From IMG/VR virus record IMGVR_UViG_3300032675_000001, positions 124,001 to 188,000 of that record: 64,000 bases of DNA; one strand, 5' to 3'. The notes under the pieces are model-generated. The model saw nothing but the letters and a program-made list of their open reading frames with translations, was not told the DNA's origin and made no database searches. Positions 15,001 to 39,854 of this stretch are shown here, piece after piece. The stretch's first letter is position 1. Each line of letters opens with the position of its first letter. The position numbers and the translations under genes were made by a program.

Positions 15001-18000
15001 ACAACTGCTGGCTGGAATGCAGGATACAGACCCAACTTAGTTGGGGTATTTGGCACATACGAACCATATGTTTGATTGTATTCTTTGATCACTATCTGAT
15101 CACCAGCTTGAAGCGTAATGAACACCTCAAGAGTTGGAGAATCAGTGCTGATAGAATAATCCACTCCACTTAACAACTGCTTTTCAATAGCAACTCCCTG
15201 TGTGGTAGTCAAATGATACACGAGAACGCCATTGTAATTTGCGGTCTCAAAATTATAGATTTGACTTAATGGATAAAATGTGCTACTTGAAAGATTGTTA
15301 AAAGTATATGTATTGGAAATATATGGTGTTTGTGATGGCAGCATGTCTGACCAGAAAAATGCCTGATCTGGACTCTTTGCAGAAGTAATCTGCTGCAATG
15401 CTGTATCAAGAATCTGTGATGGGGTAAAACGCTGTGTGTAGTTATAGTTCTGTACAGTGTTGACAATAATCTGTTTGTATGTGATATATTCGCGGCTATT
15501 ATACAACAGTGCATCAAATATGTCATATTGAGTTGAACGCAAGAATGCCCCCGGCAAAACGAGTGATGCCGAGTTCTGAATTATTTTGGTTCCGTATGGA
15601 ACAAGATTTCCCAAATCTCTGTAATTATTTGCTCCAAATACTGGACCAGATGTGTTAGGCGCATTGATATAAATGTCCTGATACTGGTCACGTATATCAC
15701 CCATGTTAGCTGTAGTCAAGTTGTCATTTAGTGGGTTATTGTTTAGATTGATAGGAATATCATAATAACCAAACTGACTTACTTCATCACTAAGAACGAA
15801 TATTTGAATTACTGTTGGGGTTGTAGGTAACGTATTAAGAGTTACAATAGTTAAACTGTTACCAACTTCATAAGTATATGTTGATGGGTCCTGATATACA
15901 TTGTTGATATATACTTTTAAAGTTGGCCATCCTGGGTTTGAATCTGTAGGCGGAGTTAGTGCGGTGACATCACATACAAATGAATTTGAGACTGCCACAG
16001 TTGGATCATAATCATAGCTGAATACTTGATACTGAGTACTATCTGCAATGGCTGTTTGCCATCCCAACTGTCTTACCTCAGTGGTCAGGTCAGTATAATT
16101 ATAAACATAACCTATATTAACGTTTTCGGTTACAGCAGTGGTTCCGTTAACATAAGAAAATGTATCCAAGTTTAAAGAAACGTCAAAGCTTATATCACCA
16201 ATATTGTCAATGCTACTGTATCTGATTGGGAATCCAAGAACAGGATCATTAGTTCCAGTGCCAATACCATATGCAAATATCTTACATCCGTTAAACGAAG
16301 TACTTACATAAACCGATTGATCGCCCAATGATATTCCATTACTGTCAAAAATATCAAATAATGGTGCTTGGTTAACTGTCTTCTTCTGTTGACCAGATAC
16401 CCATGGACCATTTATATTTGCGGGATCGTAAAAGAATGTTAATCCTTGATTATAATATCCACGTGAGATGACGGTCTGTTCTTCTGGTAATACAACACCA
16501 TCCTCTGCTACAGTAAGCGTGATGATTGGAGTTGAGAATGGAGTGATTTGAGAGAACTCAGCAACATAAATTTTGTTTGCTACCTCTGGGTCTTCATCTG
16601 CCGCAAAGATAACGCGAGCGCCCGGAAATAGCGCATAATCGCTTACGTCCAAATCTGATGCGACGATGGACACATTATTTCCTGCGGAAACGTTCTGTGC
16701 AAACTCCCAAGAAACAGTAAGAGTAAGCGTAGTTGTTCCAGAAATGCTGGTAATCTGTGTATTGACTGGCAGCACGCCTGCCGAATCAGCGATAAACATC
16801 AAGTTTGCGAACGATCCTGTTACGGCGCTGGCAGGAACTGTTACAGTAGTAGATGTAGCGTTAGTTACAGGAGCAATGGTAGCAGAATACGTTGTGTATG
16901 TTTGAATGTCAGGATAATAATTAAATGATCCAGCAACCTGATTAAGTGCATTCGTTGCCTTCATATCAATATAATCTACTGGCAATTTACCTACAATACC
17001 AGAATTAAAGAGTTTTAGGTTTGGATAAAACTCAATGATTGGACGTACAGCACGATTGGATGCAGATGCATAAGTTGTGATGATTGTTGGGTCATTGTTG
17101 TATCCGGCAATCGCGCTGATAACATCCGCGTGGAACCAGCGATTGCTTCTGGACCAAGCATTCATGTTTATTGCTCCACGAGCAATAGTGATATAGTCCG
17201 GAACGGCAGGTATATTCAACTCGCCATCATAATTTAAATCATCATACCCAGTTGACGAAAATGGAATATATTCTTCTTGAGTAAATGCTTCTGGACAGAC
17301 CAAAGTGCTTGCAGGAACCAGTTGGATTGCAGTGCCAACTCCTTGCACATAGTACTGGTCCTGTAGATATGTTTCTGGGACCACACTTCCAGAAAATGTT
17401 ACAAGAAGACCGTTTGTGAAGACCACGCCATTAGGTGAGGTGTATGTCTTTTTGCCAAGAATATCCGTATCAACATCAATAGTAACATTTACATTGTTGT
17501 CAACAATGTTGATCACTCCAACGTTTTCTGGATTGGTTCCATCCTGATAATACAATGTATTCAGTGGAGCAGTTATACTTGGAACAAGATTAATATCACC
17601 AAGGACATCACGATAAAAAGGAAGACCGATCCATTCTACACCGTAGGTCGGAATAATATTTACTTGAGTAGGAATAACTGATGTTGGAATCAAACGAATG
17701 ATTGGGTTTGATGGATCGCCAACATATTGCACCGTGTAAAAAGTTTGGTTTACGGTTGAATACAGACCTTCTTCCCACAATCCTTGGTTCACATTTAATG
17801 TCATTGAGCCAGAGCCAGTGGTGAGAGTTAGAGGTGTTCCATTAAGAGTTTCTGAAATAGTAAAATCTGTTGAGTTCAATATTGAACTAATAAAGTATAC
17901 TTGACCAGCAACGATTCCGCCAAAAACTGGATTGTTGCCATTAACAGAAAAGGTTACTGTATTATTCACAGTTAATGATGAGGTGCTTCCTGTTGATAAA

Positions 18001-19064
18001 GTAAATGCATTGTCTACCGAACTTGACGCACTGACATTAAGAGTCAATGGTGGAATAACTACCTGATTATTTGGATCATATGGATCATTAGGAACGCCTT
18101 GATTAGTATCATATGGCGTTTCATTCAAATATTCAGAAGTATATCCTATTTCATTCGGAACACCAGTGTTATAGAACATCACGGTGAGTCCATTGAGAGA
18201 TGTTATACCATCAATGCCACCAAAGCTGTTTACTAACTGACCTTCAACTTCCGCGAATGGGAGAGTGCTTACCACATCAACTGAAACGCTGCTAGGAAAT
18301 ACATATTCACTTTGTGCGTTTGACAAAGGAACATTGAAAATTACCTCACCGCTAGTAGCGCCATTATTTTCAACGCCATCCACATCACGCAAATACAAAT
18401 TAGGATGAACAGTTGAATATCCAGAAATACCCGGCTGAGTCTGAATCCAAAACTGTGATGATTGATTAACATTGAACACATATGAACCACCACGCAACAG
18501 TGTTATTGGAGGATTAACAGAACTAGAACTTGATGTTCCGGTAGTAATTTCATAACCGTTTGGTAAATCAACAACTGTATAGTTTTCATTATTGTAAATC
18601 GTGGAAGTTCCAACGGTCACAGAAGGTGGCCCTTCTGGCAACCAGTAATATTGAGTATAGTTGATAAGCTTGTCTAGATCAGTAAAAGAATCCCATGAAT
18701 AAAACTGACTAGGGAACAATCTACTGTTATTATTTGTTACGCCACTTTCAAGTGATAATGCATCCAGAATTCCCGGATATGTAATAAAATCGGTTGCAGT
18801 TCCCGCTGGTGGATTCACCGAGGTTGATGGTGCCGTAAACACAACTGCCGGGTCCAATTGGTAGTTAGCACGAGTAGTATTTGGTTCAGTGACATAATAG
18901 TCATTGGCGTTAACGCCATACCCAATCTTACTGCCTACGTAGCCCTGAATCTTCATTGAGCTTGGTGGGTTTACCAATTGATCCAGTGTTGCTCCCAAAA
19001 ATTCTGCATTAGTAGCAGTTTGGAAGATGTTTGGGAGAAAGTTTAGTGTTCTTATTCTAGCCAT
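84..19064 (-). CDS. Giant baseplate wedge/fibre-like structural protein (6326 aa) with ~15 repeated small beta modules and FG-GAP/BNR-like propeller segments
   Basis: Single long ORF directly downstream of gp6; INEVKPYH motif typical of wedge proteins; repeated xxFxGxxFGGIxxGxxYYV modules; SxDGxxW repeats; FG/VGAP propeller motifs. Confidence 0.8.
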   Translation of the reverse strand: MARIRTLNFLPNIFQTATNAEFLGATLDQLVNPPSSMKIQGYVGSKIGYGVNANDYYVTEPNTTRANYQLDPAVVFTAPSTSVNPPAGTATDFITYPGILDALSLESGVTNNNSRLFPSQFYSWDSFTDLDKLINYTQYYWLPEGPPSVTVGTSTIYNNENYTVVDLPNGYEITTGTSSSSSVNPPITLLRGGSYVFNVNQSSQFWIQTQPGISGYSTVHPNLYLRDVDGVENNGATSGEVIFNVPLSNAQSEYVFPSSVSVDVVSTLPFAEVEGQLVNSFGGIDGITSLNGLTVMFYNTGVPNEIGYTSEYLNETPYDTNQGVPNDPYDPNNQVVIPPLTLNVSASSSVDNAFTLSTGSTSSLTVNNTVTFSVNGNNPVFGGIVAGQVYFISSILNSTDFTISETLNGTPLTLTTGSGSMTLNVNQGLWEEGLYSTVNQTFYTVQYVGDPSNPIIRLIPTSVIPTQVNIIPTYGVEWIGLPFYRDVLGDINLVPSITAPLNTLYYQDGTNPENVGVINIVDNNVNVTIDVDTDILGKKTYTSPNGVVFTNGLLVTFSGSVVPETYLQDQYYVQGVGTAIQLVPASTLVCPEAFTQEEYIPFSSTGYDDLNYDGELNIPAVPDYITIARGAINMNAWSRSNRWFHADVISAIAGYNNDPTIITTYASASNRAVRPIIEFYPNLKLFNSGIVGKLPVDYIDMKATNALNQVAGSFNYYPDIQTYTTYSATIAPVTNATSTTVTVPASAVTGSFANLMFIADSAGVLPVNTQITSISGTTTLTLTVSWEFAQNVSAGNNVSIVASDLDVSDYALFPGARVIFAADEDPEVANKIYVAEFSQITPFSTPIITLTVAEDGVVLPEEQTVISRGYYNQGLTFFYDPANINGPWVSGQQKKTVNQAPLFDIFDSNGISLGDQSVYVSTSFNGCKIFAYGIGTGTNDPVLGFPIRYSSIDNIGDISFDVSLNLDTFSYVNGTTAVTENVNIGYVYNYTDLTTEVRQLGWQTAIADSTQYQVFSYDYDPTVAVSNSFVCDVTALTPPTDSNPGWPTLKVYINNVYQDPSTYTYEVGNSLTIVTLNTLPTTPTVIQIFVLSDEVSQFGYYDIPINLNNNPLNDNLTTANMGDIRDQYQDIYINAPNTSGPVFGANNYRDLGNLVPYGTKIIQNSASLVLPGAFLRSTQYDIFDALLYNSREYITYKQIIVNTVQNYNYTQRFTPSQILDTALQQITSAKSPDQAFFWSDMLPSQTPYISNTYTFNNLSSSTFYPLSQIYNFETANYNGVLVYHLTTTQGVAIEKQLLSGVDYSISTDSPTLEVFITLQAGDQIVIKEYNQTYGSYVPNTPTKLGLYPAFQPAVVLDSDYTIPTWFIKGHDGSYTKLYGDYDESLGVLIDFRDQALFEFENRIYNNLKLSTQVPISKYEVVPGFFRDSTYSWSEFLSIYSPAFLNWIGQNRLDYKTQFYTAYNEYSYNYTNSAVKINNTVIQQGYWRGLYEYLYDTTNPNETPWEMLGLPNQPTWWVERYGPAPYTSDNGILWGDLEAGLIWNNGDPYINPEVARPGLSTIIPVDSNGDLLSPLTAVVGNYDPSTFQKDWKVGDDGPTELSYRRSSTYPFDLMRIYALTRPAEFFNLGVDLDNYKYSEEFNQYLVNDRSHLVLNNIQVYGNGIAKTSYINWMVDFAKQQGVDATTGITTLLNNLDVRLVYRLAGFSDQNQLQFYIEKGSPNSTNASLLIPNESYSVLLYENQPFEQIIFSGVIIQQNDGYWTVYGNSQLFAYFTVANPIFTGGYSNLSIEKLSVNVTNKYSETKTTIVPYGTKFYSAQEVAQFLMSYGAYLEQQGMNFDQIQNGVPVNWTQMVYEFLYWAQTGWANGSLINLNPAATMMEIDPGTAVVQPLTIQNQNFILNQDLYPIDLKYLCVNRDGTAFSAHPLNQGDSLAYGQFNVSNFEHGIVFDNVTVFNDIIYNLVTGLRQNRIYVRGIKSADWNGTVNAGGFIISQDNIQEWTGNLKYTKGQIVTYKNKYWQALDIVQPTQTFDPTYWKQILYSDIQFGMLANPSTRAYESTLYYDVNQANLQEDADLLAFNLIGYRPRDYLALLDLTSQAQVQIYQNMIKNMGTLNAVSAFDGATLPTGGISYNTYENWAILSSQFGGVLNNNFVDFQIDSDLMSGDPSIVSLTNGGGTDGAMQEVPLYGLFNYGTPVSDPNILTTTTAEAASYLYPPAGYVNFNDVAMSSYFYAGLPRAVDISGAIVPIQNFYVGQYAWIANFFNQWNVFAWKSVGQVIKVQNNLNSTATVTFAAPHNLTKLQPLSIVNFATNIDGYYIITDVPNIMQVTINLSIIGANQTTVNGYGIGLTFESHRVTNPSDIEGLDLTQADFVDNLVWVDTNVDGDWAVLLKSNTYEMQNELEQPTSTTFGSAVAFTNSAGYLIGDAGAGKLYCYTYNALSESYNLSQTITNSTSFGSQIVYSEANNIYVVSQPTGTPNVFIYVLNSSPISDNLIAYQTISAPGGVTNWGSTMAMSKDSNWLYISDIVNNNVYVYRKENIPLQAGHFVSGQTYIITEVGTTDFTTIGAVYNEVGITFVATGSGTGTGTATQCTYQQASVINGSTYGYVSGDDFSAALSTDQDGSLLVVGAPLKNYSGTIEDWGQVSVFNRTEQNFLAQYTSNAGQAITFPLAWTPVATSTITASATASGTNLITCSASMTSYPVNTPIVFTGNLSGTNISTNQVYYIASTSTNTITIKTSRNTTTPVSLATASLSGVQVYVQVTPLYVSVNGSLVNDCNYAAVGSNFVYYGGLNAGDIINVSDSQFFLAQTFNSNYHDRTGIHFGYSVANSNGGSDVLVGSPFEISDINGQEGAVYKYSNGGAKYGVVIGSGGCNVTAQSTILINGFAVTIPTGNATVVANAINNAGIINVQAAATSDNNIIIQCINSALAQVNQELVITATNTSGILSEIGITTYTETQILQCPYTTGPTQFGHTIKVDQFNNIVVSAPSGTRYEGTVFDFVDYIDLDNDTVFDNNATQFVDSYPNAGAVYMFQYMADYNESLITPGQYVYAQSINDNSTSYGNSPMYGSSLDFNDNTVVVGTPNFVPGLYNGQVVVYTNATGTPVWSVYRSSSPVVDINTIQNTQLYSASTNETLVNFDYIDPLQGKILGAARENLDYITSADPAQYNSNLASNNGNMWGASQVGQLWLDTTNVRWVNYHQNDVVYNSKYWGSVFPGSDVAVYSWIASFIPPNQYQGPGVPYNINLYCINAVLNASNVVVPVYYFWVRNTNTIFTQANKTLADSSVASYIANPRGSGISFMAPLLPNTFAMYNSLQFFNGTDTVFHVGFSNGNNDDIAHQEFALIREGFAEDFLPGIPPITKHPTVITTVQGNTTTVSSGEPSSLYARMLDSMAGCDQFGAVVPDPFLPAAVQSGVQVRPRQSFFYDRFMAINNYLTYANGILAQYPITELRPDATFLFASGEFFNTSDYWSYTYWWADGYSDSTKSLYQVPYYADLATLNVSTGTLVTVQQNGNGSAEIYRNDGNGVWTRVGLQNGTIAFNTSLWDYADAQIGWDGSFFDTGSFDTYPSQETYYIIRALNEQIFTEDLLQYRNLSLILLFQYIQSETVESQNFLPWLNKTSLLDVQHTLRELLPYSNYVTDNFDFLSGYINEVKPYHVLIKDFLYDYTGSEEYTGNITDFDVPAQFNSQYQNFISPQIVYSGADTEYEYLNTDSIWQTAPYTQWYQNYGLSLTGQPDYQLTTLTSYMTTSSTFMIVNNANGFPSSGIITIDDEQIGYETVDPALNMISGLTRGANNTTITTHIPGAPIIMDLPPVVLLDGGNDYQNPPRVTAYIDTSIYPAPTVPAELEAVMSLGTVIGINVINPGQGYVAMPEIIIDPSYVINFADTAINELLNTIVVYAPSLVTGQVVQYRAGTDDVGIGGLQDGQWYYVNVLQTVPTSVIALYTTYSDAINDKNRVNIYSIGSTSSLTLSAGARAFGISTSYPVRENNITIKYDRTTYNSQILDWESGAYYGSFFAGSYENILQVSSSDIQLQSVNPNIASILSSAQGATFEIVDVSNNNQLDWSSTIRYVSGTYSANNAIRLVPQGSTEPNASGSTIGFYVGMPVKFIGAVVGNLVNEQLYYVASVINETDFTVSQTIGGPVVSLTTATVSAAGLQCYIAQSVNTAVLTINYPGILNVTNTTSGTNYLTVPTSVIGTGGTSGFYPGLSVFFSENVFGGIVENQVYYINTVIDQQTFTISPYDTQLTLTATATSATGNIITTSLNPGFNLNDPIIFTGTTFGGITAGVTYYVSELISETEMTISATLNGPVVTLTTATGSMTVTNQSDSPVLTTASGNMTMNVSLPVSPGQVNGQQFTLYGTSGQYPNITELTVGNLIERQVDATVSGVNIIALDINSDGTDLFYAGMPIQFSSAIGGLSTGTTYYVLTYSGMSDVTNIEISATQTLGSDYGNVIVCNTTSYLYSGMPIVFSGQSLGGLIIGQIYYVKTITSGTQFTVSTTEGGSVVALTDQTGEMTGVGTPYITVSTSIGGLPVSLSSSTSGSTLTQYITSTPTIDISYVLGGYRAIFTSSGSGFAIDNIITISGALVGGTSPLNDVTLSVNSINSTGGIINAICSGTVPYTSQQYYLKVISPTQLEVYSDQLLSQPVSGVDFPFVGFTTDTVTAVSTSNNSITISNTGQFNINDAVVFTGNTDVSASTIVEYQTYYIVSILNGTQLQVSATPGGSAINIASAASTNFTIAKAGSFAFLPEPFFFNQSIVKFNGRVYVCVVSNNDSEFVLGKWELIDSDDPRLNAMDRVIGYYQPTVNMPGVDLTQLFEGVTYPNAIYQGNAFQPSLQYPLDTVLQDQPFYPNGINITSIIYNDGYYFATANLPTYSAVIYSTDGINWLINKLLNANVDITSISYANGNYLITSTNSATPLLTSLDGFNWTSGGNIITYDSDSNSTNDNLISSVGLTLQSSSYSNELWVAVGNNIITSQDGVNWTEVHTYNTTYEVEMNGITYVNSQYFTGYVAVGSGVTYSYAGPVSALVPTSIVSYSTDSIKWIDAPLTNQYFNGIKTTPVPITENGWNSVAVNNVTGQIIAVGQNGVIYTSLNAVNWLGLNEVDALSVNTYTNAINVTNTSGFTVGESVVFNNSFSSIVAGTHYTIASITSTSSLTLTGVTLTNGSVPAYTVMSSVNNTPTLNNVVYENGLWLAVGNTGTIITSANGVNWTVQTSGITENLYGITYTNNTWVVTGDNNAVLSSTDGVNWTYTSIFTPVPPVYDVQGGTFQSGYGPEELVPGVVWDNFAMTVITRPGITWPVEQYGHNGYNVVSTQMVPQSATQTVYSFADIVHYPAQVFVQKIDATSCLGTTLTLNTDYTVNWINKTITLTNPLPFTPLMDTLRVDVYEVGNGSQLVKSNTDVDPIRTDPVTGFNQIYVDCNYSAAIYNGSGVVKPGSYDIDVQATQTIASDNSIVCAGVSQLSINDAITFEGITFGNIVEGTTYYVKSVSTATDSITVSDSFNSMTGQAGPIFELTDATGSMYVIIQAGTGTTWTSPIIYHNGTKLLCGGTNIVTNTTAGTNTITTNSTTGMVTGSPITFSANMFGPDIVPLQTYYVADVLGTTTFTISTSPTGSPVLPLTTQQGGATFITYDYAFGIQPDGISAMIIFSTDAYSNNNDYLSYTLFGQTEPQQIGYSIPETQWFTGTGSQTVFDLSNNVQGLVNPASAVVEVSGLRQKPSTYTIAPANNTITFNSAPALNAPIAVTTYNDTTQQYLNTQTITASGSNSVYAISTISNNITAPLANTTATATASGTNYITVASTSGFVVNQTVFFEGTGFGGISTSGTVYFVKSIVNSTTFTISATQGGSALSLTTASGNMLVTVGGQPAVRVTTNGTNGFTTGEIVRIDGTAGSTQLNGNYYYVRVISSTQFDLYTQAYSSSLNAVNYPVTAISAYTGGGYTWIQGSYYLVDTTASATASINNAITVSSTAMLDVNTPVLFSKLGSLDGTNILGGLIQGTTYYVNEILSPTTFNVASSQYGSVVALSNASGTVNVTQWEQTNVDRLWVTINGYRVPSSCLRMNSSNELSILAPISSGDTVIITNMIPTATPSEEIYMNFVNQTGEATVYRANTGTRTWLTQPLSLESDLIYVQDVTSVTNNVIQTSVTPEAALNEFGDNVYSIGLNNVDKTLITGITVYNNRTNQYIPTSSYQVVIVDLAPVLEINVGSYITVGDSLTINTLVGNTIYVNGEQIKFNIVNLTNNTLGGLQRGANGTGAQLYIPQYTEAFSLTSNNELPSAYYNQTWNSYVYNSTLGDPLQISQTIPAKFLEVDVT

Positions 19065-31563: not shown

Positions 31564-31638
31564 ATTTTCCTCTGATAAATAGACTTTGCTCTATTTGTAT
31601 TTATCGCTCAAAAAAACTCGTTTTTTTACCCATAACTG

Positions 31639-31667
31639 TTGTATTTTTACAACAGGGATAGTACAAT
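31639..31667 (+). promoter_or_regulatory. Sigma70-type promoter upstream of the late sigma factor gene
   Basis: TTGTAT-17 nt-TACAAT. Confidence 0.5.
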
Positions 31668-31691
31668 AGTAATCTACGCAGAGGATCAACC

Positions 31692-32585
31692 GTGGCGATT
31701 AAACCAAAGAAACCAATAAACTACTTAAACAATAGAGACATTCTCAAAGAGATACACAAGAGCAAGGCAACATACTGTTATTATACCCAACCAGAGTATC
31801 ACATGTATGATCTGATTATTGATGCTCCGGAAAGTTCAATAGAGTTTAGCCTTGAATACGCACTTAAAGATGAACAAATACAGACTGCAAAAATAGTTAG
31901 AGCGGCAAGGTTATCACAGGAATCAGAACAGAAAATTCTTCCAGATTCTATCCCTACACAAGATTTAGTTTTTCGCGTTATGACTTGGGATCACATTCCG
32001 GTATCACAGAAGCAACCAAGAAAGACCACCAAGAAGAAAACCGCCAAGGACATCATAGCATTTGACGAAGATGATGTTGAGGACTTTTCAGACTTAGAAG
32101 ATAAGTCAACCAAAGGCGAGGTGGATGATATGGTTCACGTAAAGGTTAACTTCCCTCCATTCCAACATTTTAAACTTGATGAAACCAACACATTTAGATG
32201 TGTTGGTAAATCTCATTGGGTTGATGGCATTGAGAATGGACACTTTTCTAAAGATCACGGCAACATCACTAACAAGTTAGCTCGTATGTATATGATGCTT
32301 TGTGAGAAGTATGCTATGAAGTTCAACTGGCGCGGCTACACTTACAATGATGAAATGAAGGCGAGTGCCGTTTTACAGTTAACTTATGTCGGTCTACGTT
32401 TCAACGAAGCTAAATCGGCAAACCCATTTGCCTATTATACAGCAGCAATCACGAATAGCTTTTGCCGGGTGTTAAACACGGAAAAGCGCAATCAAAGCAT
32501 TCGTGATGACATTCTTGAGATGAATGGATTGAACCCGTCATTCTCGCGACAGATGAGTACGCCAAAGGCACCGATCATAGAATAA
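31692..32585 (+). CDS. Late-transcription sigma factor, T4 gp55-like
   Basis: NYLNN.D.L.EI; NWRGYTYNDEM; FNEAKSANPFAYYT; adjacent to gp47/gp46 as in T4-like phages. Confidence 0.85.
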   Translation: MAIKPKKPINYLNNRDILKEIHKSKATYCYYTQPEYHMYDLIIDAPESSIEFSLEYALKDEQIQTAKIVRAARLSQESEQKILPDSIPTQDLVFRVMTWDHIPVSQKQPRKTTKKKTAKDIIAFDEDDVEDFSDLEDKSTKGEVDDMVHVKVNFPPFQHFKLDETNTFRCVGKSHWVDGIENGHFSKDHGNITNKLARMYMMLCEKYAMKFNWRGYTYNDEMKASAVLQLTYVGLRFNEAKSANPFAYYTAAITNSFCRVLNTEKRNQSIRDDILEMNGLNPSFSRQMSTPKAPIIE

Positions 32586-32643: not shown

Positions 32644-33660
32644 ATGTCGAACCTATTCAAAAAAGCAGCAGTATTCACCGACATACACTTTGGACTAAAG
32701 AGCAATAGCCTGCAACACAATCAAGATTGTGCAGACTTTGTTGATTGGTTTATAGAGAAGGCAAAATCTGAAGGGTGTGAAACGTGTTTGTTTTTGGGTG
32801 ATTGGAATCACCACAGAGCAAGCATTAACATTCACACCCTCCAGTTTGGTCTTCGTGCATTAGAAAAACTCAATGCATCGTTTGAAAAAGTGTATTTCAT
32901 TCCCGGCAACCATGATCTCTACTACCGAGACCGTAGAGACATTCATTCAGTTGAGTGGGCATCTCATCTGCCTAATGTGACCATCGTAAACGATTGGTTC
33001 AGTGAAGGCAATGTTGTGATCGCTCCTTGGCTGGTGGGTGAAGACTATAAGAACCTACCCAAACTAAAGGGTAAGTATCTTTTCTCGCATATGGAACTAC
33101 CAAACTTCTATATGAACGCAATGGTTGAAATGCCAGATCATGGCGAAGTCAACCTTGATCACATCAAACACTTTGATCGCGTATTTTCTGGACACTTCCA
33201 CAAGCGCCAATCCAAGAAAAACGTCTGGTATATTGGTAATGCCTTCCCGCATAACTATGCAGATGCTGGTGATGATGCGCGTGGTATGATGATATTGGAA
33301 TGGGACCAAGAACCTGAGTTTTATTCATGGCCCGGACAGCCAATGTTCCGTGTATACAAACTCAGTGAGATTCTTGACAATCCAGAAGGATTACTTCTTC
33401 CGAAGTCAAACGTGAGAGTTCATCTTGATATTGACATCTCATACGAAGAAGCAAACTTTATCCGAGAAACTTTAATCCCGACATACAGTCTTCGTGAAAT
33501 GGCACTTATTCCAGTAAAGAATAGTGAACATTCACAAGACTTGGCACCGGGAGAACTAAAGTTTGAGTCCGTTGACCAGATTGTATTAGAAAGTATAAAT
33601 AACTTAGAAAGTTCCACCTTCGATAGGAATTTACTAAGGAGCATATATGATAATCTGTGA
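32644..33660 (+). CDS. Recombination nuclease, gp47/Mre11/SbcD-like
   Basis: Metallophosphoesterase motifs DIH, GD, GNHD, H, SGHFH. Confidence 0.92.
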   Translation: MSNLFKKAAVFTDIHFGLKSNSLQHNQDCADFVDWFIEKAKSEGCETCLFLGDWNHHRASINIHTLQFGLRALEKLNASFEKVYFIPGNHDLYYRDRRDIHSVEWASHLPNVTIVNDWFSEGNVVIAPWLVGEDYKNLPKLKGKYLFSHMELPNFYMNAMVEMPDHGEVNLDHIKHFDRVFSGHFHKRQSKKNVWYIGNAFPHNYADAGDDARGMMILEWDQEPEFYSWPGQPMFRVYKLSEILDNPEGLLLPKSNVRVHLDIDISYEEANFIRETLIPTYSLREMALIPVKNSEHSQDLAPGELKFESVDQIVLESINNLESSTFDRNLLRSIYDNL

Positions 33661-34615
33661 GTATTGTAAATTAGAGGCAGCGCACACCTTCAAAAACGGA
33701 ATTCATTGTTGCAGTAAAAATGTGTCTGGGTGTCCAGAAATCCGAGCAAGACGAGAGAATACCGCTATGGTGAAATACGGAGACAAAAACTTCAAAAACC
33801 ACACCAAAGCAAAAAAAACTAAGCTAACACGGTACGGTGATGAAAATTATAATAATCGCCAGCAAGCAGAAGCAACGACAACTAAAATGTATGGAGTTTC
33901 CAATGTTAGTAAAATAGAAGACATAAAAGTAGCGAAACAATCTACCTTTAGTAAAAACTATCCTATAGGGTCATCCGAAAGAACTGACTTAGGTAATACC
34001 AGGGCAATCTCTTGGAAATCGAATGTTGTGTCCGAGATTACGGACAAAATAAAAACTACGTGCGCAGATAGGTATGGAGTGGACAATCCGAATAAAAACC
34101 CAGATATCGTTTCTAAACGAAAGCAAACAAACTTGGCTAGATACGGACAGCAGCCCGGATTCGGCACGGAGAAGTTTAAAAACACCATTAGACAAAAATA
34201 CGGGGTGGAGAATGTCTCGCAACTCGCAGAAATTCACGAAAGACAACAGCGACCTAATTGGAAATCATACACTCTTCCTTCCGGAAAAATTATTAAGGTG
34301 CAAGGATACGAAAACTTAGCGCTGGATGCATTGATGTCGGTGTATGACGAAAATGATGTTATTACGGTTAGGAAAGAAATACCGGCGGTTTGGTATGAAC
34401 ACGATAACATACGCAGAAGGTATTATCCAGATATGTTAGTTGTGCCTACCAACACGATAATAGAAGTTAAATCGGAATACATTTTTAAAAATAATGAAGA
34501 AGTCAACATGAAGAAAAAAGATGCATGTTTATCCATGGGGCTGGCATTTGAGTTTTGGATATACGAATCAAAAACACACGAACTAAGAAAGCTAATATAT
34601 CCCGCATGTCAATAA
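33647..34615 (+). CDS. Putative free-standing homing endonuclease with a C-terminal PD-(D/E)xK domain
   Basis: N-terminal Cys cluster; repeated KYGVxNxS DNA-binding-like motifs; YYPD...IIEVKS; inserted between gp47 and gp46 and overlapping both. Confidence 0.7.
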   Translation: MIICEYCKLEAAHTFKNGIHCCSKNVSGCPEIRARRENTAMVKYGDKNFKNHTKAKKTKLTRYGDENYNNRQQAEATTTKMYGVSNVSKIEDIKVAKQSTFSKNYPIGSSERTDLGNTRAISWKSNVVSEITDKIKTTCADRYGVDNPNKNPDIVSKRKQTNLARYGQQPGFGTEKFKNTIRQKYGVENVSQLAEIHERQQRPNWKSYTLPSGKIIKVQGYENLALDALMSVYDENDVITVRKEIPAVWYEHDNIRRRYYPDMLVVPTNTIIEVKSEYIFKNNEEVNMKKKDACLSMGLAFEFWIYESKTHELRKLIYPACQ

Positions 34616-36684
34616 TTTTGAAAAACATAACACTGCGTAATTTTCTTTCAATCGGGGCAGTTTGCCAAGCTGTCAACTTTGATAGCAAAGAACTAACACT
34701 CATCATGGGTCAAAACTTAGACCTTGGTGGAGATGGTGCAAGAAACGGAACAGGAAAAACCACCCTGATTCAAGGGCTGGCATATGCTCTATTTGGATCA
34801 CCGATCAATAGCATTCGCAAGGATAACCTAATCAACCGAACCAATGGTAAGGGAATGATGGTAACTCTAGAGTTTAATGCAAATGGCATTGATTACAAGA
34901 TTGAGCGTGGACGTAAACCAAACATTCTTAAGTTCTATGCAAACAGCAGCTTGCTAGAGGGTAAGGATGATGCTCAGGGAGAAAACAAGGAAACACAGGC
35001 TGCAATTGAGCGCGCTATTGGTATGTCTCCTGACATGTTCAAACACATTGTCGCGTTGAACACGTATTCTGAACCATTTCTGGCTATGAAGGCAAATGAT
35101 CAACGTCAGGTCATTGAGCAGTTACTTGGTATCACTTTACTGTCTGAGAAGGCAGAAGCCATCAAGGAAAAAAGTAGGGCGAACAAGGAAAGCATTCAGC
35201 AGGAAGAGTTCAAGGTAAAGGCCATTGAAGAGGCAAACAGGCGCATCCAAGAGCAGATTGATGCGCTTAAGAGAAGACAGACACTTTGGATCAAAAAGCA
35301 CGAAGAAGATTTAAACAAGCTTGTCGCAGATTATGACGAACTGACGAAGATTGACATTGATGCTGAACTTCAAGCACACAAAGACCTTGCTGCGTATCAG
35401 ATCACCAAAAAGAAGCACGATGATCGCAATGCTCTTATTTCTCGCCAGATAGCATGGAAGCAGAAGCAAGACAAAGACATTGCTTCTTTACAAAAAACTT
35501 ACGATACACTGAGTCGTATTGACATTGATGCTGAACTTCAAGCACATCTTGACTTGGTTACATACAACCAAAATAAGACACAGGTTGATAATGCAAAGAT
35601 CAGAGTAAAACAACTTGAAACGAGTTTAGTTAAAGACCAAAAGGCAATTGACAAACTCACTAGTGAGATTAAAACTCTTGAGAGTAACAAGTGTTATGCC
35701 TGTGGTCAAGACTTCCATGATGATAGCCATTCGGACGTTATTAACTCCAAGCGTGAACTCTTATCATCTGCTATGGCAGAGTTGGACCAGACCAAAAATG
35801 ATTTAGAAAAAAATAAACTTTTAATCGTAGATTTTGGTCAACCTCCAGTCACTTACTATAAGACTCACGCCGAAGCAATCAAGCACAGTTCTGAACTTGA
35901 AAACATTCAAAACCAAATCATAGCGAAGCAGAACGAATCTGATCCATATGCGGAGCAAATCTCAGAAACTGATGCCTTAGAAACCCTTGGAACGCTTCCT
36001 AAGACTATATACGATACGGAGACACAGGCGATTGAACATCGGTCTACTGTGGCAAGCTTATTGCAGCAGATTGAACGTAAAGTCGCGGAGAGTGATCCTT
36101 ATGCGGAACAAGTAGTTGAAATGGAATCTCAGGCATTACAAGTTGTGGATTTTGAAAAGATCAATGAACTGTCAAAGTATGGTGATCACTTGAAGTTTCT
36201 ACTGGACTTGTTGACGAGCAAAGATTCCTTTGTTCGCAAGAAGATCATTGATCAAAACTTGTCATATTTGAACGCAAGACTTACTCATTACTTGGACAAA
36301 ATGGGACTTCCTCATACTGTCATTTTCAAGAATGACTTGTCGGTTGAAATCACTGAACTCGGGCGTGAACTTGATTACTACAACCTATCACGTGGTGAGC
36401 AGAACCGACTAATTCTTGGGTTGTCGTTTTCGTTTAGAGATGTATGGGAGAATTTATATTATCCCATCAATGCGATGTTTATTGATGAACTGCTGGATAA
36501 TGGTACCGATGCGGTTGGGATGGAAAATTCAATGACGGTCCTTAAGGATATGAACAGGACCCGAGGAAAATCAATATGGCTAGTCAGCCATAAGGATGAT
36601 CTAACCAACCGCGTCAATAATGTTCTCAGTGTTGTCAAATCGGGTGGGTTCACCAGTTATTCAATGGTAACTGAGTCAGAATAA
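34606..36684 (+). CDS. Recombination ATPase, gp46/Rad50/SbcC-like (probable start 34606)
   Basis: Walker A NGTGKT, CYAC zinc hook, LSRGE signature, FIDE Walker B, VSH. Confidence 0.92.
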   Translation: MSIILKNITLRNFLSIGAVCQAVNFDSKELTLIMGQNLDLGGDGARNGTGKTTLIQGLAYALFGSPINSIRKDNLINRTNGKGMMVTLEFNANGIDYKIERGRKPNILKFYANSSLLEGKDDAQGENKETQAAIERAIGMSPDMFKHIVALNTYSEPFLAMKANDQRQVIEQLLGITLLSEKAEAIKEKSRANKESIQQEEFKVKAIEEANRRIQEQIDALKRRQTLWIKKHEEDLNKLVADYDELTKIDIDAELQAHKDLAAYQITKKKHDDRNALISRQIAWKQKQDKDIASLQKTYDTLSRIDIDAELQAHLDLVTYNQNKTQVDNAKIRVKQLETSLVKDQKAIDKLTSEIKTLESNKCYACGQDFHDDSHSDVINSKRELLSSAMAELDQTKNDLEKNKLLIVDFGQPPVTYYKTHAEAIKHSSELENIQNQIIAKQNESDPYAEQISETDALETLGTLPKTIYDTETQAIEHRSTVASLLQQIERKVAESDPYAEQVVEMESQALQVVDFEKINELSKYGDHLKFLLDLLTSKDSFVRKKIIDQNLSYLNARLTHYLDKMGLPHTVIFKNDLSVEITELGRELDYYNLSRGEQNRLILGLSFSFRDVWENLYYPINAMFIDELLDNGTDAVGMENSMTVLKDMNRTRGKSIWLVSHKDDLTNRVNNVLSVVKSGGFTSYSMVTESE

Positions 36685-36761: not shown

Positions 36762-37517
36762 ATGAATATTTATCATAAAACATTACCATATATCTATAAA
36801 TGGATACATATACCTACCGGAAAATGGTATATTGGTTCTAAAGTGAGAACTGGATGGAACCCCTCGCGACATGAAGAGTATATATGTTCGAGCAAAGAAG
36901 TCAAGCCATTGGTTATGGAAAATCGAGATGATTGGGAATATCATATTCTGCATACTGGTGATGCAGCTTATATTGTCAATTTGGAAAAAATTATACTGTC
37001 TGAATTAGATGCTAGGAATGACCCAATGAGTTATAACCAGCACAACGGGGATGGACTATACAATAGATATGGTGTTAAAGAAAATGAAAACACTAGACTT
37101 AAGAAAAGTGCCGCTCGCTTAGCCGAAAAAAACCCAATGTATGGTAAAAGAGGTGACCTGTCCCCACATTATGGTAAATCACATTCATCTTGTTGGAGAA
37201 AAAACCAAAGCATTGGTCTAAAATTGTATAATGAAAATAGACCTGCTGAGCATAACAATAATATTTCAAAAGCATTGAAGGGTAACCCAAAACTATCAGA
37301 AAAAATGATTGGAGAAAATAACCCGCGTTATGGCAAACCAGCTTTAGAGCACAACAAACGCGCCTCGTCAATTGCAAATTCAGGAAACAATAACCCCATG
37401 AAAAAACCAGAACATCAGCGTACATGTGAACATTGCTGTAAAACCGTGGCTAAAAATCATTATACACTATTCCATCGGGACAAATGTAGATCAAAACCTG
37501 CAACCGACATAGAATAA
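36762..37517 (+). CDS. GIY-YIG-like (Seg-type) homing endonuclease with NUMOD3-like repeats
   Basis: YIYKW...WYIGS; NPMYGK/NPRYGK repeats; C-terminal CxxC..H..C. Confidence 0.75.
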   Translation: MNIYHKTLPYIYKWIHIPTGKWYIGSKVRTGWNPSRHEEYICSSKEVKPLVMENRDDWEYHILHTGDAAYIVNLEKIILSELDARNDPMSYNQHNGDGLYNRYGVKENENTRLKKSAARLAEKNPMYGKRGDLSPHYGKSHSSCWRKNQSIGLKLYNENRPAEHNNNISKALKGNPKLSEKMIGENNPRYGKPALEHNKRASSIANSGNNNPMKKPEHQRTCEHCCKTVAKNHYTLFHRDKCRSKPATDIE

Positions 37518-37554
37518 AAATTTTCAGGTGCGATTGTAAAGGATAAATCATTAT

Positions 37555-38148
37555 ATGCCATCACCACAGAAAGCTAAAGGTTCTTCCTTCGAACGTGAAG
37601 TCGCAAAGTTCCTGTCTAAAACCTATAACGAAAGTTTCATCAGAGCACCTGGCTCTGGAGCTTATGTTGGAGGAAAGAATCAGGAACGCAAGCAGTTTCT
37701 ACACGAAGGACAGATTCGCAGCTTCAAAGGTGACATCGTGCCCGGACAGACTTTCACTAAGTTTAACGCAGAGTGCAAGTCATATGCAGACTTCCCGTTT
37801 CATTTAATGTTAACGGGAAGTTGCAAAATCCTGGATACTTGGATTGAACAGCTTATGGCTGTAGCAGAAGAAGATGATTGTAACATTCTATTCATGAAGT
37901 TCAATCGTAAGGGACGCTATGTCGCTGTTCAAGCCAAGTATACTTGGGTAACAGATTATTTCATATACTACAGTTCCGCCAAGGTTGGCGACTGGGTATT
38001 CATTGAATTTGATACATTTTTTGAAAACAACAAAGACCTTTTTAAAGCATATTCAGGCTCAACATCTAGCTCATTATCTAGCCCATCACCTAGCCCATCA
38101 GACACCATGTCAGACACATCAGCTAACATTCTCACCATAAACATTTAA
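37555..38148 (+). CDS. Holliday junction resolvase-like PD-(D/E)xK nuclease (Hjc-type)
   Basis: KG..FEREVA, R.P.SGA, GDI and ECK motifs. Confidence 0.7.
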   Translation: MPSPQKAKGSSFEREVAKFLSKTYNESFIRAPGSGAYVGGKNQERKQFLHEGQIRSFKGDIVPGQTFTKFNAECKSYADFPFHLMLTGSCKILDTWIEQLMAVAEEDDCNILFMKFNRKGRYVAVQAKYTWVTDYFIYYSSAKVGDWVFIEFDTFFENNKDLFKAYSGSTSSSLSSPSPSPSDTMSDTSANILTINI

Positions 38149-38176
38149 CTCAACATCTAGCACATTTCCTAGCACA
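38058..38176 (+). repeat. Cluster of short C/A-rich direct repeats
   Basis: CTCAACATCTAGC at 38058 and 38149; CTAGCCCATCA x2; CAGACAC x2; CTAGCACA x2. Confidence 0.6.
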
Positions 38177-38189
38177 AAAACCCCACATT

Positions 38190-38760
38190 GCTGTCTGGTG
38201 TACGTTCGTAGACCCTCCTTGAGGAAGCAGGATTTAGAACCCCTGTAGTCCGGATTCTGGAGTATGCCTGACCGAGAGGTCAGTGCCAGATTCAACATAG
38301 TCTGGTGGAGTCTGATAGTAATATCGACCGCAAAAGCGTTAAGCAGCAATATGGTGTTTAACATTTGTGCTTTAGGAATACCGACAGGGCAATCGCACAG
38401 TAGGCGAACCCTGAATGAGTCCGTATTTAGTTTATCTCGTGGATACGGAACATGCGTTGTCGAGGAACTGGGTTAAACCAGCAGCCTCACTACACCTCCA
38501 TAAAAACCTTACAGGACAACCGGTGGCGAGCAGTAGCGTAAAAAGGCTAACTGATCGGGAGAGAGATAATAATGTATACGATGGGCCATGGCATATCGGA
38601 ATATTAGTAGTGCTTTCTGCGGAAAGCACTACTATGTCCTCCAAACCGGCAATTGTATCCGAAGTGACAATCTTTCTTAAAGAAATTAAAGCTACTAAAC
38701 GATAAAAAAATGAAAACGAACGAAGTGAGTTTTCAGATGAACGAAGTTCATCTCTTGACT
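38190..38760 (+). ncRNA. Candidate large structured ncRNA / structured origin element
   Basis: No credible ORF; more than 12 consecutive stem-loops, including GAGA and GTAA (GNRA) loops, a 13-bp cTGCGg (UNCG) hairpin, a long-range GTTGTC/GACAAC pair and terminal cGAAg hairpins. Confidence 0.6.
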
Positions 38761-38805
38761 TAAACAAAAGATGAACTCCTTAATATACGGCTGGGATAGG
38801 TGGGT

Positions 38806-39036
38806 TTAGAAATAAGGCAGTTGTGATTGCTTGGTTATTTCTAGATTGTTCTCAATGATTTCATTGATAGACTGACGTTCAAAAGCAGACATATTTAATA
38901 TGTCCTCATAAGAAGCACCTCCACGCATGTGCCATGCCATGGATAATGCTCCTTTCTTCACTCCCTCAACTTCAACTTCGTATTGTTTAATAAGCTTCTG
39001 AATTTCCTCGGGTGTGGAATGCAGAAGCTTTATTCG
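38806..39036 (-). CDS. gp51-like / gpT-like segment, probably translated by -1 frameshift from the upstream gene
   Basis: 76-codon open -1 frame RIKLLHSTPEEIQKL...WHMRGG.SYEDILNMS.FER...LPYF with no start codon in its first ~25 codons; not in the ORF track. Confidence 0.7.
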   Translation of the reverse strand, partial: RIKLLHSTPEEIQKLIKQYEVEVEGVKKGALSMAWHMRGGASYEDILNMSAFERQSINEIIENNLEITKQSQLPYF

Positions 39037-39854
39037 AAAAAATCCACTGGGCTTAGTGTGAATGGTTGTTCATATTCGTGCCCACATCCGTCACACTTAA
39101 TGTTAAGTGGTTTTATTTCTGTTGCGGCTTTAAGTTCACCGTTGTAATCTCTGATCTTATTGTAGACATTTCTATCACAGTTCTTCAAGTAATCAAGGAT
39201 GAATTCTTTTTGATCTACTCTAACGCTTGAAGTTTGAATATACTCAATAGTCTGTGTCAATAGATTCATTGTGAGAGCAGTAATCTTTTCTAACGTATCT
39301 TTAGTGATTCTGTTCTTTTCTTCTTCTGATTCTGAGTTTTCAATGTTCACAAATGTACGCTGAAGTTCAAAATTTGCCAAAGCGGCATCATTCATTTCCT
39401 TGTAAGTAAGAGGTTTGAACTTGATGCTCAAGTCTCCAACAGTCAAAGTGTTATCGTAATTTCCTGGCTTTAAGGTATTAAGAATAGGAATAAGATTGAC
39501 GCCATAAGTGTTGGTTTCTGTGCACGAAGGGCATGAAGTTTCAAGCTCAAGTACATCACCGGAAGAAGCAATCTTGATGGCGATCAAAATAGCATCCATA
39601 TCGTTGCTGCTAATTTTCCAAGGGTCTTTGATCACTGGAACACAACTTTTCACAATGTCAACGAGTGCCGTACCATTAAAAAGTGCGTCCGGTGTTCTGG
39701 TGGTGATTTCATCAATAGCAGTCATGGGATATACTGGGATTTCTCCAGTTTCAGGGATGTCAATCATGCCATCCACGTAATCTTTTCCTCCGGAAGGAAG
39801 CTTAAAATATACAGCCGGTCTTCGGAAGTATTGCTTTAGTGGGTTGTTGTTCAT
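39030..39854 (-). CDS. Baseplate hub / tail assembly chaperone, gp26-like
   Basis: NPLKQYFRRP..Y..LPS.G, PMTAIDEI, two CxxC pairs, ends DFFE. Confidence 0.7.
   Translation of the reverse strand: MNNNPLKQYFRRPAVYFKLPSGGKDYVDGMIDIPETGEIPVYPMTAIDEITTRTPDALFNGTALVDIVKSCVPVIKDPWKISSNDMDAILIAIKIASSGDVLELETSCPSCTETNTYGVNLIPILNTLKPGNYDNTLTVGDLSIKFKPLTYKEMNDAALANFELQRTFVNIENSESEEEKNRITKDTLEKITALTMNLLTQTIEYIQTSSVRVDQKEFILDYLKNCDRNVYNKIRDYNGELKAATEIKPLNIKCDGCGHEYEQPFTLSPVDFFE

What the first reader, a model, noticed from the sequence alone, without database searches (positions are those of the whole stretch)
38652..38753. ssDNA-type cGAAg hairpins at the 3' end of the structured element: possible RNA-primed replication origin
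Seen: TGAAAAC-GA-AC-GAA-GT-GA-GTTTTCA (38711-38735) is immediately followed by AGATGAAC-GAA-GTTCATCT (38735-38753), with a weaker cGAAg at 38660 and an A-tract just before the pair. Established: GNA triloops closed by C-G and tandem G.A pairs are exceptionally stable in single-stranded DNA, and similar hairpins occur in primosome/single-strand initiation signals. ColE1 and T4 origins are primed by persistent RNA-DNA hybrids. Inference: loop type switches from RNA-like to DNA-like along the element, which suggests a folded primer RNA followed by an ssDNA signal, i.e. an origin next to the gp46/47/resolvase genes.
Basis: partly seen in the sequence, partly recalled or inferred. Interest (0 to 1): 0.7.

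Follow-up and report, generated by a model that had tools for sequence, protein, structure and literature searches.

The report
Conserved G·A/GNA double hairpin beside phage RNA
Two small hairpins with unusual G·A pairs and GAA loops are real, occur once per genome and are conserved in about 200 related lake and marine jumbo-phage sequences, always just after a previously undescribed large folded RNA; whether they mark a replication origin remains untested.

Summary
Comparative data, not single-sequence folding, show they are real: 98% of cells paired, 12 of 16 pairs with compensatory changes, 0 of 500 shuffles as good. There is one copy per genome in six large phage genomes.

They always follow a roughly 0.45-kb pseudoknotted RNA that matches no Rfam family. 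That RNA lies on the + strand right after a D14-like nuclease gene.

A core hairpin is capped by GNRA tetraloops. H1 and H2 instead carry cGNAg/GNNA loops, tandem G·A pairs and almost no G·U wobble.

The origin interpretation stays unsupported:
- GC skew follows gene strand and shows no extremum or sign change at the site.
- No promoter-like site adjoins the AT-rich linker.
- No RNA or coverage data could be obtained.

A canonical terminator is also a poor fit. There is no U-tract after H2, and the minus-sense hairpin before the conserved U5 run is weak.

My best reading (confidence about 0.4) is a 3' boundary module of the new RNA that folds on the + strand. DNA-level hairpins on an R-loop's displaced strand remain a live rival (about 0.2).

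The parts
37555..38148 (+). D14-like PD-(D/E)XK putative resolvase gene. The RNA element starts just after its stop codon in relatives; the window carries about 50 extra nt in between.
   Evidence: Pfam PF24608 at 1.4e-24 and phrog_244. Annotated as D14/resolvase in PA5oct-type phages. It lies directly upstream of the RNA in 216 of 219 loci that could be evaluated.
38196..38652 (+). Core of an undescribed structured RNA. It has a 5' hairpin, long-range helices (38379-38383/38521-38525 and 38456-38461/38515-38520), a pseudoknot (38496-38499/38558-38561) and a window-specific insertion at about 38263-38375.
   Evidence: RNAalifold gives 65 pairs, 41 with compensatory changes. G·U pairs identify the + strand. 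The pseudoknot covaries. No Rfam family matches. More than 300 homologous loci were found.
38652..38671 (+). Local ATTGT/ACAAT hairpin holding the 'weaker cGAAg' (38660-38664). It is not conserved.
   Evidence: Sequence. The matching alignment columns are variable in relatives.
38671..38710 (+). AT-rich, A-biased linker of variable sequence and length, ending in an A7 run (38704-38710).
   Evidence: The window linker is 53% A and 28% T. Across 183 elements it is 75.6% A+T (44% A), against 59% A+T for the genome. A is conserved at -7 to -3 before H1.
38711..38735 (+). H1: a 7-bp outer stem, tandem sheared-type G·A/A·G (38718-19 with 38727-28), a 2-bp inner helix (38720-21/38725-26) and a GAA triloop (38722-24).
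   Evidence: Five of six outer pairs and both inner pairs show compensatory changes, and the G and A of the mismatches are invariant. The motif is kept in 167 of 195 elements. Larger versions nest or repeat the same GA-NN...NN-GA frame.
38735..38753 (+). H2: a perfect 8-bp stem closed by C-G over a GAA triloop.
   Evidence: Five of eight pairs show compensatory changes. The stem is a perfect 8 bp in 183 of 197 elements. Loops: cGAAg 107, cGTAg 14, cGTAAg 12, and a minority of non-G..A loops.
38769..38776 (+). Third copy of AGATGAAC. It can pair with the 3' arm of H2 to form an alternative hairpin. Seen only in the window's close relatives.
   Evidence: MFE fold of 38690-38835. The same arrangement occurs in L002 and L123.
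38806..39027 (-). Conserved small convergent ORF that ends 52 nt beyond H2. It is followed upstream by the baseplate-hub gene (39030-39854, minus strand).
   Evidence: 49% identity over 73 aa to the L055 counterpart. Present and convergent in 217 of 233 loci. The hub gene is PF12322 / phrog_150.

Best explanation
H1 and H2 form a conserved, single-copy double hairpin that folds on the + strand. It closes the 3' side of a previously undescribed, roughly 0.45-kb pseudoknotted RNA gene placed right after the D14-like nuclease gene of a clade of lake and marine jumbo T4-like phages.

Most likely the module is transcribed together with that RNA, in the order core, A-rich linker, H1, H2. The RNA probably forms the 3' part of the gp47-gp46-D14 transcript, because no promoter is conserved in front of it. 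In the transcript, the compact G·A- and GNA-capped hairpins would give the RNA a defined, nuclease-resistant or protein-recognised 3' structure.

Because the stems are kept strictly Watson-Crick, they can also fold in the antisense direction. There, followed by the conserved U5 run, they may help keep the convergent late baseplate transcripts out of the RNA gene.

Shown: the hairpins, their covariation, strand specificity, single copy and fixed linkage to the RNA. Inferred: that they are transcribed, and that they define or protect the 3' end.
For: Covariation is strong: 98.2% of cells paired, 12 of 16 pairs with double changes, 0 of 500 shuffles. The module is present in 194 of 197 unique elements, with H2 perfect in 183, always 125-373 nt after the core motif. 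There is one strong model match per genome in the window's own genome and in five related genomes of 259-525 kb.

The invariant G·A mismatches and the G..A loops make sense only on the + strand, which is the strand of the RNA according to the core's G·U pairs. Compensatory changes in H1 are mainly transitions, as in the core. No conserved promoter lies between the D14 gene and the RNA's 5' hairpin, and no + strand promoter-like site was found at 37000-39300. A U5 run on the minus strand follows H1 in 80-90% of elements.
Against: No transcript data are available; no RNA run was listed. The linker between core and H1 varies in sequence and length, so no structural coupling to the core is shown. 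Synteny in this clade is rigid, so linkage to the RNA cannot be separated from linkage to the neighbouring genes.

The loop repertoire (GAA, GTA, GATA, GTTA) fits the DNA mini-hairpin rule better than the RNA GNRA rule that a core hairpin obeys. G·U is almost absent. H2 changes mostly by transversion flips. The predicted RNA stability of the pair is modest, -13.5 kcal/mol. No U-tract follows H2 in the + sense.
Confidence: 0.4

Rival explanations
1. DNA-level function. The long RNA runs into the AT-rich linker and forms a persistent RNA-DNA hybrid. The displaced non-template (+) DNA strand then folds into H1/H2. These are hyperstable as DNA, keep the R-loop open, and give a priming or helicase-loading signal. 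The site would be an origin, or another single-strand initiation site.
For: The loops follow the DNA mini-hairpin rules cGNAg/GNNA, whereas a core hairpin uses GNRA. d(GCGAAGC) melts at 76.5 C, against 39 C for the RNA r(GCGAAAGC), and such hairpins occur at the G4 origin, RSF1010 ssiA and N4 promoters (PMC13037366). Stems are strictly Watson-Crick, with wobble no commoner than other mismatches. H2 changes by transversion flips. The G·A/GNA strand is the non-template strand for the RNA. An AT-rich linker lies directly upstream. There is one copy per genome. No canonical terminator ends the + RNA. The site lies next to the gp46/gp47/resolvase genes.
Against: GC skew follows gene strand (+0.047 in + genes, -0.040 in - genes). 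Its cumulative extremes are at about 120 and 266 kb, and nothing marks 162.7 kb. T4 R-loop origins need only a promoter plus an AT-rich unwinding element of about 100 bp, share no motif and lie at transcriptional divergences (PMC3016281). Here no promoter-like site adjoins the linker and transcription converges locally. About 16% of H2 loops are not G..A type (TTT, TGC, AAA and others). The core's invariant junctions and pseudoknot are unexplained by a primer role. No replication data of any kind exist.
Confidence: 0.2
2. The hairpins are transcription terminators between convergent units and nothing more. H1 in antisense plus U5 would stop the late baseplate operon, and H2 would stop the + strand transcript.
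For: The module sits between convergent genes in 217 of 233 loci. The conserved A5 run before H1 is a U5 run on the minus strand, 1-2 nt after the stem. Strict Watson-Crick stems would fold in both senses.
Against: The consensus scan calls no terminator here. After H2 the sequence is 'YU' followed by A/G-rich sequence, with a longest T run of 2 or fewer in 112 of 120 elements. In the minus sense, H1 is a 6-7 bp A/U-rich stem with an 11-nt loop, and the predicted energy for both hairpins together is only -12.1 kcal/mol. The same genome's clear terminators have G+C-rich stems and T4-T6 runs (sequences upstream of 49914 and 53895). A terminator does not explain the invariant + strand G·A pairs, the selected GAA loops, or the sequence conservation of the stems.
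Confidence: 0.15
3. A DNA or RNA site recognised by a specific protein and unrelated to the RNA's 3' end or to an origin. Examples are a structure-specific target for the neighbouring SbcCD-like gp46/47 or the D14-like nuclease, a packaging or nicking site, or an N4-type hairpin promoter.
For: The outer halves of H2 (AGATG/CATCT or AGTTG/CAACT) are conserved in sequence. The site is single copy. It is adjacent to hairpin- and branch-cutting nuclease genes. N4 promoters use cGNAg hairpins (PMC13037366).
Against: The inner stem positions vary but stay complementary, so intrastrand pairing is selected, not a duplex operator. No virion RNA polymerase was detected: the 6326-aa ORF is a structural protein family, although the rest of the genome was not screened. 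There is no direct evidence for any such activity.
Confidence: 0.1

Closest known systems
DNA mini-hairpins d(GCGAAGC)/cGNAg at single-strand initiation sites (G4 complementary-strand origin, RSF1010 ssiA) and at N4 virion-RNAP promoters
   Same: C-G-closed GNA and GNNA loops with a sheared G·A pair, and short stems. In H1 the frame is often literally GC-GAA-GC. The motif is strand-specific.
   Different: The known sites act in ssDNA phages or plasmids, or with a virion RNA polymerase. Here the host genome is a 360-kb T4-like dsDNA phage with no detected vRNAP. The hairpins carry extra tandem G·A pairs and follow a large folded RNA. Function as DNA has not been shown.
T4 oriF/oriG R-loop origins
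   Same: An RNA made by the host polymerase could run into an AT-rich stretch, and the site is near recombination and replication genes.
   Different: T4 origins are about 100 bp (middle promoter plus unwinding element), have no conserved structure or hairpins, and are not conserved in sequence (PMC3016281). Here a conserved structured RNA of roughly 450 nt precedes the AT-rich stretch, and no adjacent promoter-like site was found.
ColE1 RNA II primer with downstream primosome assembly sites
   Same: A folded pre-primer-sized RNA (roughly 0.5 kb) followed by hairpin-forming single-strand signals.
   Different: No homology. No antisense regulator was seen. This is a phage with its own T4-type replisome. 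The core RNA has invariant junction nucleotides and a pseudoknot. Nothing was tested.
Large 'ornate' bacterial and phage RNAs of unknown function (GOLLD, ROOL, OLE)
   Same: A size of several hundred nt, many covarying helices, a pseudoknot, phage and environmental distribution, and unknown function.
   Different: No match to their Rfam models or to any other. The genomic context differs, lying after a D14-like nuclease gene rather than near tRNAs. The 3' G·A/GNA hairpin module has no counterpart that I know of.
Intrinsic (Rho-independent) terminators, including bidirectional ones
   Same: Hairpins between convergent genes with an A-tract on one side.
   Different: The stems are A/T-rich, there is no U-tract in the + sense, and the loops and mismatches are conserved.

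Membership tests
T4-type R-loop origin (oriF/oriG) | Promoter (middle-mode) immediately upstream of the unwinding element, within a unit of about 100 bp | tested here: not met
   No + strand sigma-70-like site between 37000 and 39300. No conserved motif in front of the RNA or in the linker. MotA boxes were not searched specifically.
T4-type R-loop origin (oriF/oriG) | [quoted passage not shown] | tested here: met
   The linker is 75.6% A+T across 183 elements, against 59% A+T for the genome. This is a test of composition only.
T4-type R-loop origin (oriF/oriG) | Persistent R-loop and initiation of DNA synthesis at the site | not testable with these tools
   No RNA runs were listed and DNA runs are held only as contigs.
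Replication origin in general | Strand-composition shift (cumulative GC-skew extremum) at the site | tested here: not met
   The extremes lie at about 120 and 266 kb, and skew rises monotonically through 162.7 kb. Skew follows gene strand, so the test has little power in this genome.
Single-strand initiation / DNA mini-hairpin signals | C-G-closed GNA or GNNA loop with a sheared G·A pair on a short stem | tested here: met
   H2 loops: cGAAg 107, cGTAg 14, cGTAAg 12, GTTA 4 of 195. H1 core loops: GAA 102, GATA 24, GTA 23.
Single-strand initiation / DNA mini-hairpin signals | Acts as single-stranded DNA recognised by a primase or primosome | not testable with these tools
   Needs biochemistry or replication mapping.
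Intrinsic terminator | Stable G+C-rich hairpin followed directly by a U-tract on the transcribed strand | tested here: not met
   + sense: the longest T run after H2 is 2 or fewer in 112 of 120 elements. Minus sense: U5 is present, but the adjacent hairpin is weak. The scan does not call either one.
N4-type hairpin promoter | 5-7 bp stem with a 3-nt purine-rich loop, used by a virion-packaged single-subunit RNA polymerase | tested here: inconclusive
   The hairpin geometry is similar. The giant ORF is a structural protein family, not an RNAP. The whole genome was not screened for a vRNAP.
Any Rfam 15 RNA family (for the whole element) | Covariance-model match at or near the gathering score | tested here: not met
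   No match at gathering score in the window. Only chance-level hits with E of 5 or more in 37900-39000. None with E of 1 or less in nine homologous loci.
Structured RNA (generic) | Compensatory base changes that maintain helices, with G·U pairs on one strand only | tested here: met
   Core: 41 of 65 pairs have double changes, and 7.6% of paired cells are G·U. A pseudoknot covaries. H1/H2 covary but carry almost no G·U.

The most novel reading that the evidence does not exclude
The locus is a new kind of phage replication or priming site. A conserved ornate RNA, made from the recombination-gene operon, invades the AT-rich linker. The displaced non-template strand locks the R-loop open by folding into DNA-type hyperstable G·A/GNA mini-hairpins (H1/H2), which also serve as the loading or priming signal. 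This would be a hairpin analogue of the G-quadruplex-stabilised R-loops known elsewhere, present once per genome across a widespread clade of lake and marine jumbo phages.
Probability: 0.15. Interest if true: 0.85.

Novelty: new variant of a known kind. Interest (0 to 1): 0.6.

Why it matters
The hairpins belong to a conserved noncoding locus of roughly 600 nt, found in more than 300 contigs of uncultured jumbo phages from lakes and the sea. The locus combines an undescribed pseudoknotted RNA with a module that obeys DNA mini-hairpin rules rather than RNA loop rules.

If the module works as RNA, it is a new 3' end or protein-binding motif built from nested tandem G·A pairs. If it works as DNA, it would be the first case of mini-hairpins stabilising a priming site in a T4-like phage, and it would give a sequence signature for origins in uncultured jumbo phages.

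Either way, the contrast within a single locus makes the RNA-versus-DNA question directly testable with a few oligonucleotides and a metatranscriptome. That contrast is GNRA loops, G·U wobble and transition-type changes in the core, against GNA/GNYA loops, no wobble and transversion flips in H2.

Tried and rejected
- **Rfam.** Searched at gathering and at permissive thresholds on the window and on nine homologous loci. Nothing was found.
- **tRNA/tmRNA.** None found.
- **Coding explanation.** The window ORFs across the element (38415-38705 on +, 38432-38767 on -) have no collinear counterparts in L055, and the helices covary, so a coding reading is rejected.
- **Cultured relatives.** blastn of the element against deposited phage genomes gave no match. 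PA5oct, the nearest cultured relative by gp46, has no such RNA after gp46 or beside its D14-like gene.
- **Recurrent genome signal.** A descriptor search and a covariance model each find only this one copy.
- **Long-range pairing.** Pairing of the conserved CCGTAA before H1 with the TTACGG after H2 was considered. The downstream motif varies while CCGTAA stays unchanged, so there is no covariation (sequences).
- **Hammerhead-like reading of AGATGA...GAA.** The required core positions are absent (by inspection).
- **Giant ORF as an N4-like virion RNA polymerase.** No support; it belongs to a structural protein family.
- **RNA-seq evidence.** No RNA run was listed for the element. The metagenome contig scan returned only contigs of 1 kb or more, with no transcript-like ends.
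- **Literature.** Searches found no description of this RNA.
- **Promoter upstream of the RNA.** No motif is conserved between the D14 coding sequence and the 5' hairpin.

Full report
**Context.** The window is bases 124001-188000 of a 360,683-bp, 41% G+C virus record with a 123-bp terminal repeat. Gene content is that of a jumbo T4-like phage. On the + strand it reads:
- gp55-like late sigma factor (31692-32585);
- gp47/SbcD-like (32644-33660);
- a homing-endonuclease ORF;
- gp46/SbcC-like (34555-36684);
- a second homing-endonuclease ORF;
- a D14-like PD-(D/E)XK putative resolvase (37555-38148).

About 650 nt without a conserved ORF follow. Beyond that lie a small conserved ORF (38806-39027) and a baseplate-hub gene (39030-39854) on the minus strand, and then a gp5-like gene on the + strand. 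The closest cultured relatives by gp46 are PA5oct-type and other jumbo phages, at only 35-40% identity. The DNA occurs in lake-water metagenomes.

**The observation.** A single sequence proves little. Folding energies of 38700-38765 are only 1.4-2.0 sd below shuffles, as RNA or DNA and on either strand. A loose H1-type pattern occurs 15 times in the genome against about 7 in shuffles.

The evidence comes from relatives. Using gp46 I fetched 80 IMG/VR loci. That gave about 200 distinct copies.
- On 28 diverse modules, 98.2% of cells form standard pairs.
- 12 of 16 pairs show changes on both sides.
- No shuffle out of 500 reaches any of the five measures.
- Sliding the partners drops pairing to 29-46%.
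- H2 is a perfect 8-bp stem in 183 of 197 copies.
- The H1 frame GA-NN-loop-NN-GA with Watson-Crick inner pairs is found in 167 of 195.
- The G and A of the mismatches are invariant while the flanking pairs change (AC/GT 106, GC/GC 47, GT/AC 6).

Larger H1 versions nest or repeat the same frame, for example GAATGA...GAATGA arms. The A run before H1 is conserved, with A at -7 to -3 in 80-90% of copies. The 'weaker cGAAg' at 38660 lies in a variable stretch and is not conserved.

A covariance model of the module finds exactly one strong match in the window's own genome (74 bits). It also finds one in each of five related genomes of 259-525 kb.

**What lies upstream.** The 'structured element' is a genuine RNA on the + strand.
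- RNAalifold on 38 copies gives 65 pairs, 41 with compensatory changes. Two are long-range helices: 38379-83/38521-25 and 38456-61/38515-20.
- A pseudoknot, 38496-99/38558-61, also covaries: UA 27 / CG 7 and CG 33 / UA 4.
- G·U pairs make up 7.6% of paired cells, which fixes the strand.
- It matches no Rfam 15 family, and I found no description of it in the literature.
- It always follows the D14-like gene (216 of 219 loci) and precedes the convergent small ORF (217 of 233).
- No promoter-like motif is conserved in front of it, so it is probably made as the 3' part of the gp47-gp46-D14 transcript.

Between the core and H1 lies a linker of variable sequence and length. It is 75.6% A+T with A in excess at 44%.

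**RNA-like versus DNA-like.**
- Loops. In a core hairpin, all 55 G..A tetraloops are GNRA: GTGA, GCAA, GCGA, GTAA. In H1/H2 the loops are GAA and GTA triloops. Among tetraloops, GATA, GTTA and similar forms (GNYA) outnumber GNRA.
- Wobble. G·U pairs fall from 7.6% in the core to 0.45% in H1/H2. In H2, wobble is no commoner than other mismatches, 6 versus 5 in about 1,550 pairs.
- Type of compensatory change. Changes are mainly transitions in the core (199 versus 89 cells) and in H1 (24 versus 10). In H2 they are mainly transversion flips (2 versus 18).

These counts are not corrected for phylogeny. A 2026 review states that d(GCGAAGC) melts at 76.5 C while r(GCGAAAGC) melts at 39 C. It adds that GNNA variants are tolerated in DNA, and that such hairpins occur at the G4 origin, RSF1010 ssiA and N4 promoters (PMC13037366).

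**Origin?** The tests that could be run do not support it.
- GC skew follows gene strand (+0.047 in + genes, -0.040 in - genes).
- The cumulative curve has its extremes at about 120 and 266 kb, and rises steadily through 162.7 kb. This test is weak for a T4-like phage.
- T4 R-loop origins are units of about 100 bp, made of a promoter and an AT-rich unwinding element. They have no shared motif and lie near transcriptional divergences (PMC3016281). Here no promoter-like site adjoins the linker and transcription converges locally.
- The core's invariant junctions and pseudoknot suggest a functional folded RNA rather than a primer.
- About 16% of H2 loops are not of the G..A type.

Several facts do fit an R-loop model. 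The G·A/GNA strand is the non-template strand for the RNA. The + RNA has no canonical terminator. The module is single copy. RNA ends, hybrids and coverage gradients could not be examined.

**Terminator?** It is a poor fit.
- The scan calls nothing here.
- H2 is followed by 'YU' and then purines.
- In the minus sense a U5 run follows H1, but that hairpin is a 6-7 bp A/U-rich stem with an 11-nt loop.
- The genome's evident terminators have G+C-rich stems and T4-T6 runs.
- A terminator also does not explain the conserved + strand mismatches and loops.

**Verdict.** The hairpins are a real, selected, + strand-specific, single-copy module tied to a new RNA locus. I rate the readings as follows:
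- Transcribed 3' structure of that RNA, with a possible insulating role against the convergent late operon: about 0.4.
- DNA-level R-loop or priming reading: about 0.2.
- Plain terminators: about 0.15.
- A separate protein-recognition site: about 0.1.

The remaining 0.15 is left open.

Noticed in passing
window 38196-38652: Undescribed RNA of roughly 450 nt with long-range helices and a covarying pseudoknot. It has no Rfam match and occurs in more than 300 lake contigs and some marine contigs, always after a D14-like nuclease gene.
   Followed up: partly
window about 38263-38375: The window's copy of the RNA carries an extra insertion of roughly 110 nt, predicted to form hairpins, that most relatives lack (alignment A1, columns 95-200).
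   Followed up: no
window 38769-38776 (with 38746-38753): A third copy of AGATGAAC downstream of H2 can pair with H2's 3' arm, giving an alternative hairpin that excludes H2. It is present only in the window, L002 and L123.
   Followed up: partly
relatives, e.g. L066:11140-11190, L024:4153-4215, L114; absent in the window at 38754-38805: A third hairpin lies between H2 and the stop codon of the convergent small ORF. Its stem covaries, and its large loop holds a conserved (A/C)TAAATGAAYAG motif. That motif resembles the clade's late-promoter-like motif [CA]TAAATA[CGT], seen upstream of late genes.
   Followed up: partly
window 33647-34615 and 36762-37517: Two homing-endonuclease-like ORFs (DUF7487; NUMOD3) sit inside the gp47-gp46-D14 cluster. 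In L055, gp46 is followed directly by the D14-like gene, so the second ORF at least is an insertion in the window's genome.
   Followed up: partly
window 84-19064 (minus strand): A single 6326-aa ORF. It matches phrog_10938 (virion structural protein) over roughly its first two-thirds, has no significant Pfam domain, and lies next to baseplate-wedge genes.
   Followed up: partly
window about 38050-38110: The D14-like protein ends in a low-complexity Ser/Pro-rich tail encoded by a short imperfect DNA repeat. This tail is variable among relatives.
   Followed up: no
L081:7009-8521 (PA5oct MK797984.1, 75667-77179): PA5oct has about 1.5 kb annotated with only four tiny hypothetical ORFs beside its D14-like gene. 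None of this RNA's conserved motifs was detected there.
   Followed up: partly
window 31564-31691 and genome-wide: The main switch of gene orientation (divergent, genome about 155.6 kb) and the cumulative GC-skew minimum (about 120 kb) do not coincide. The 30-kb block of giant structural genes on the minus strand has slightly positive skew.
   Followed up: no
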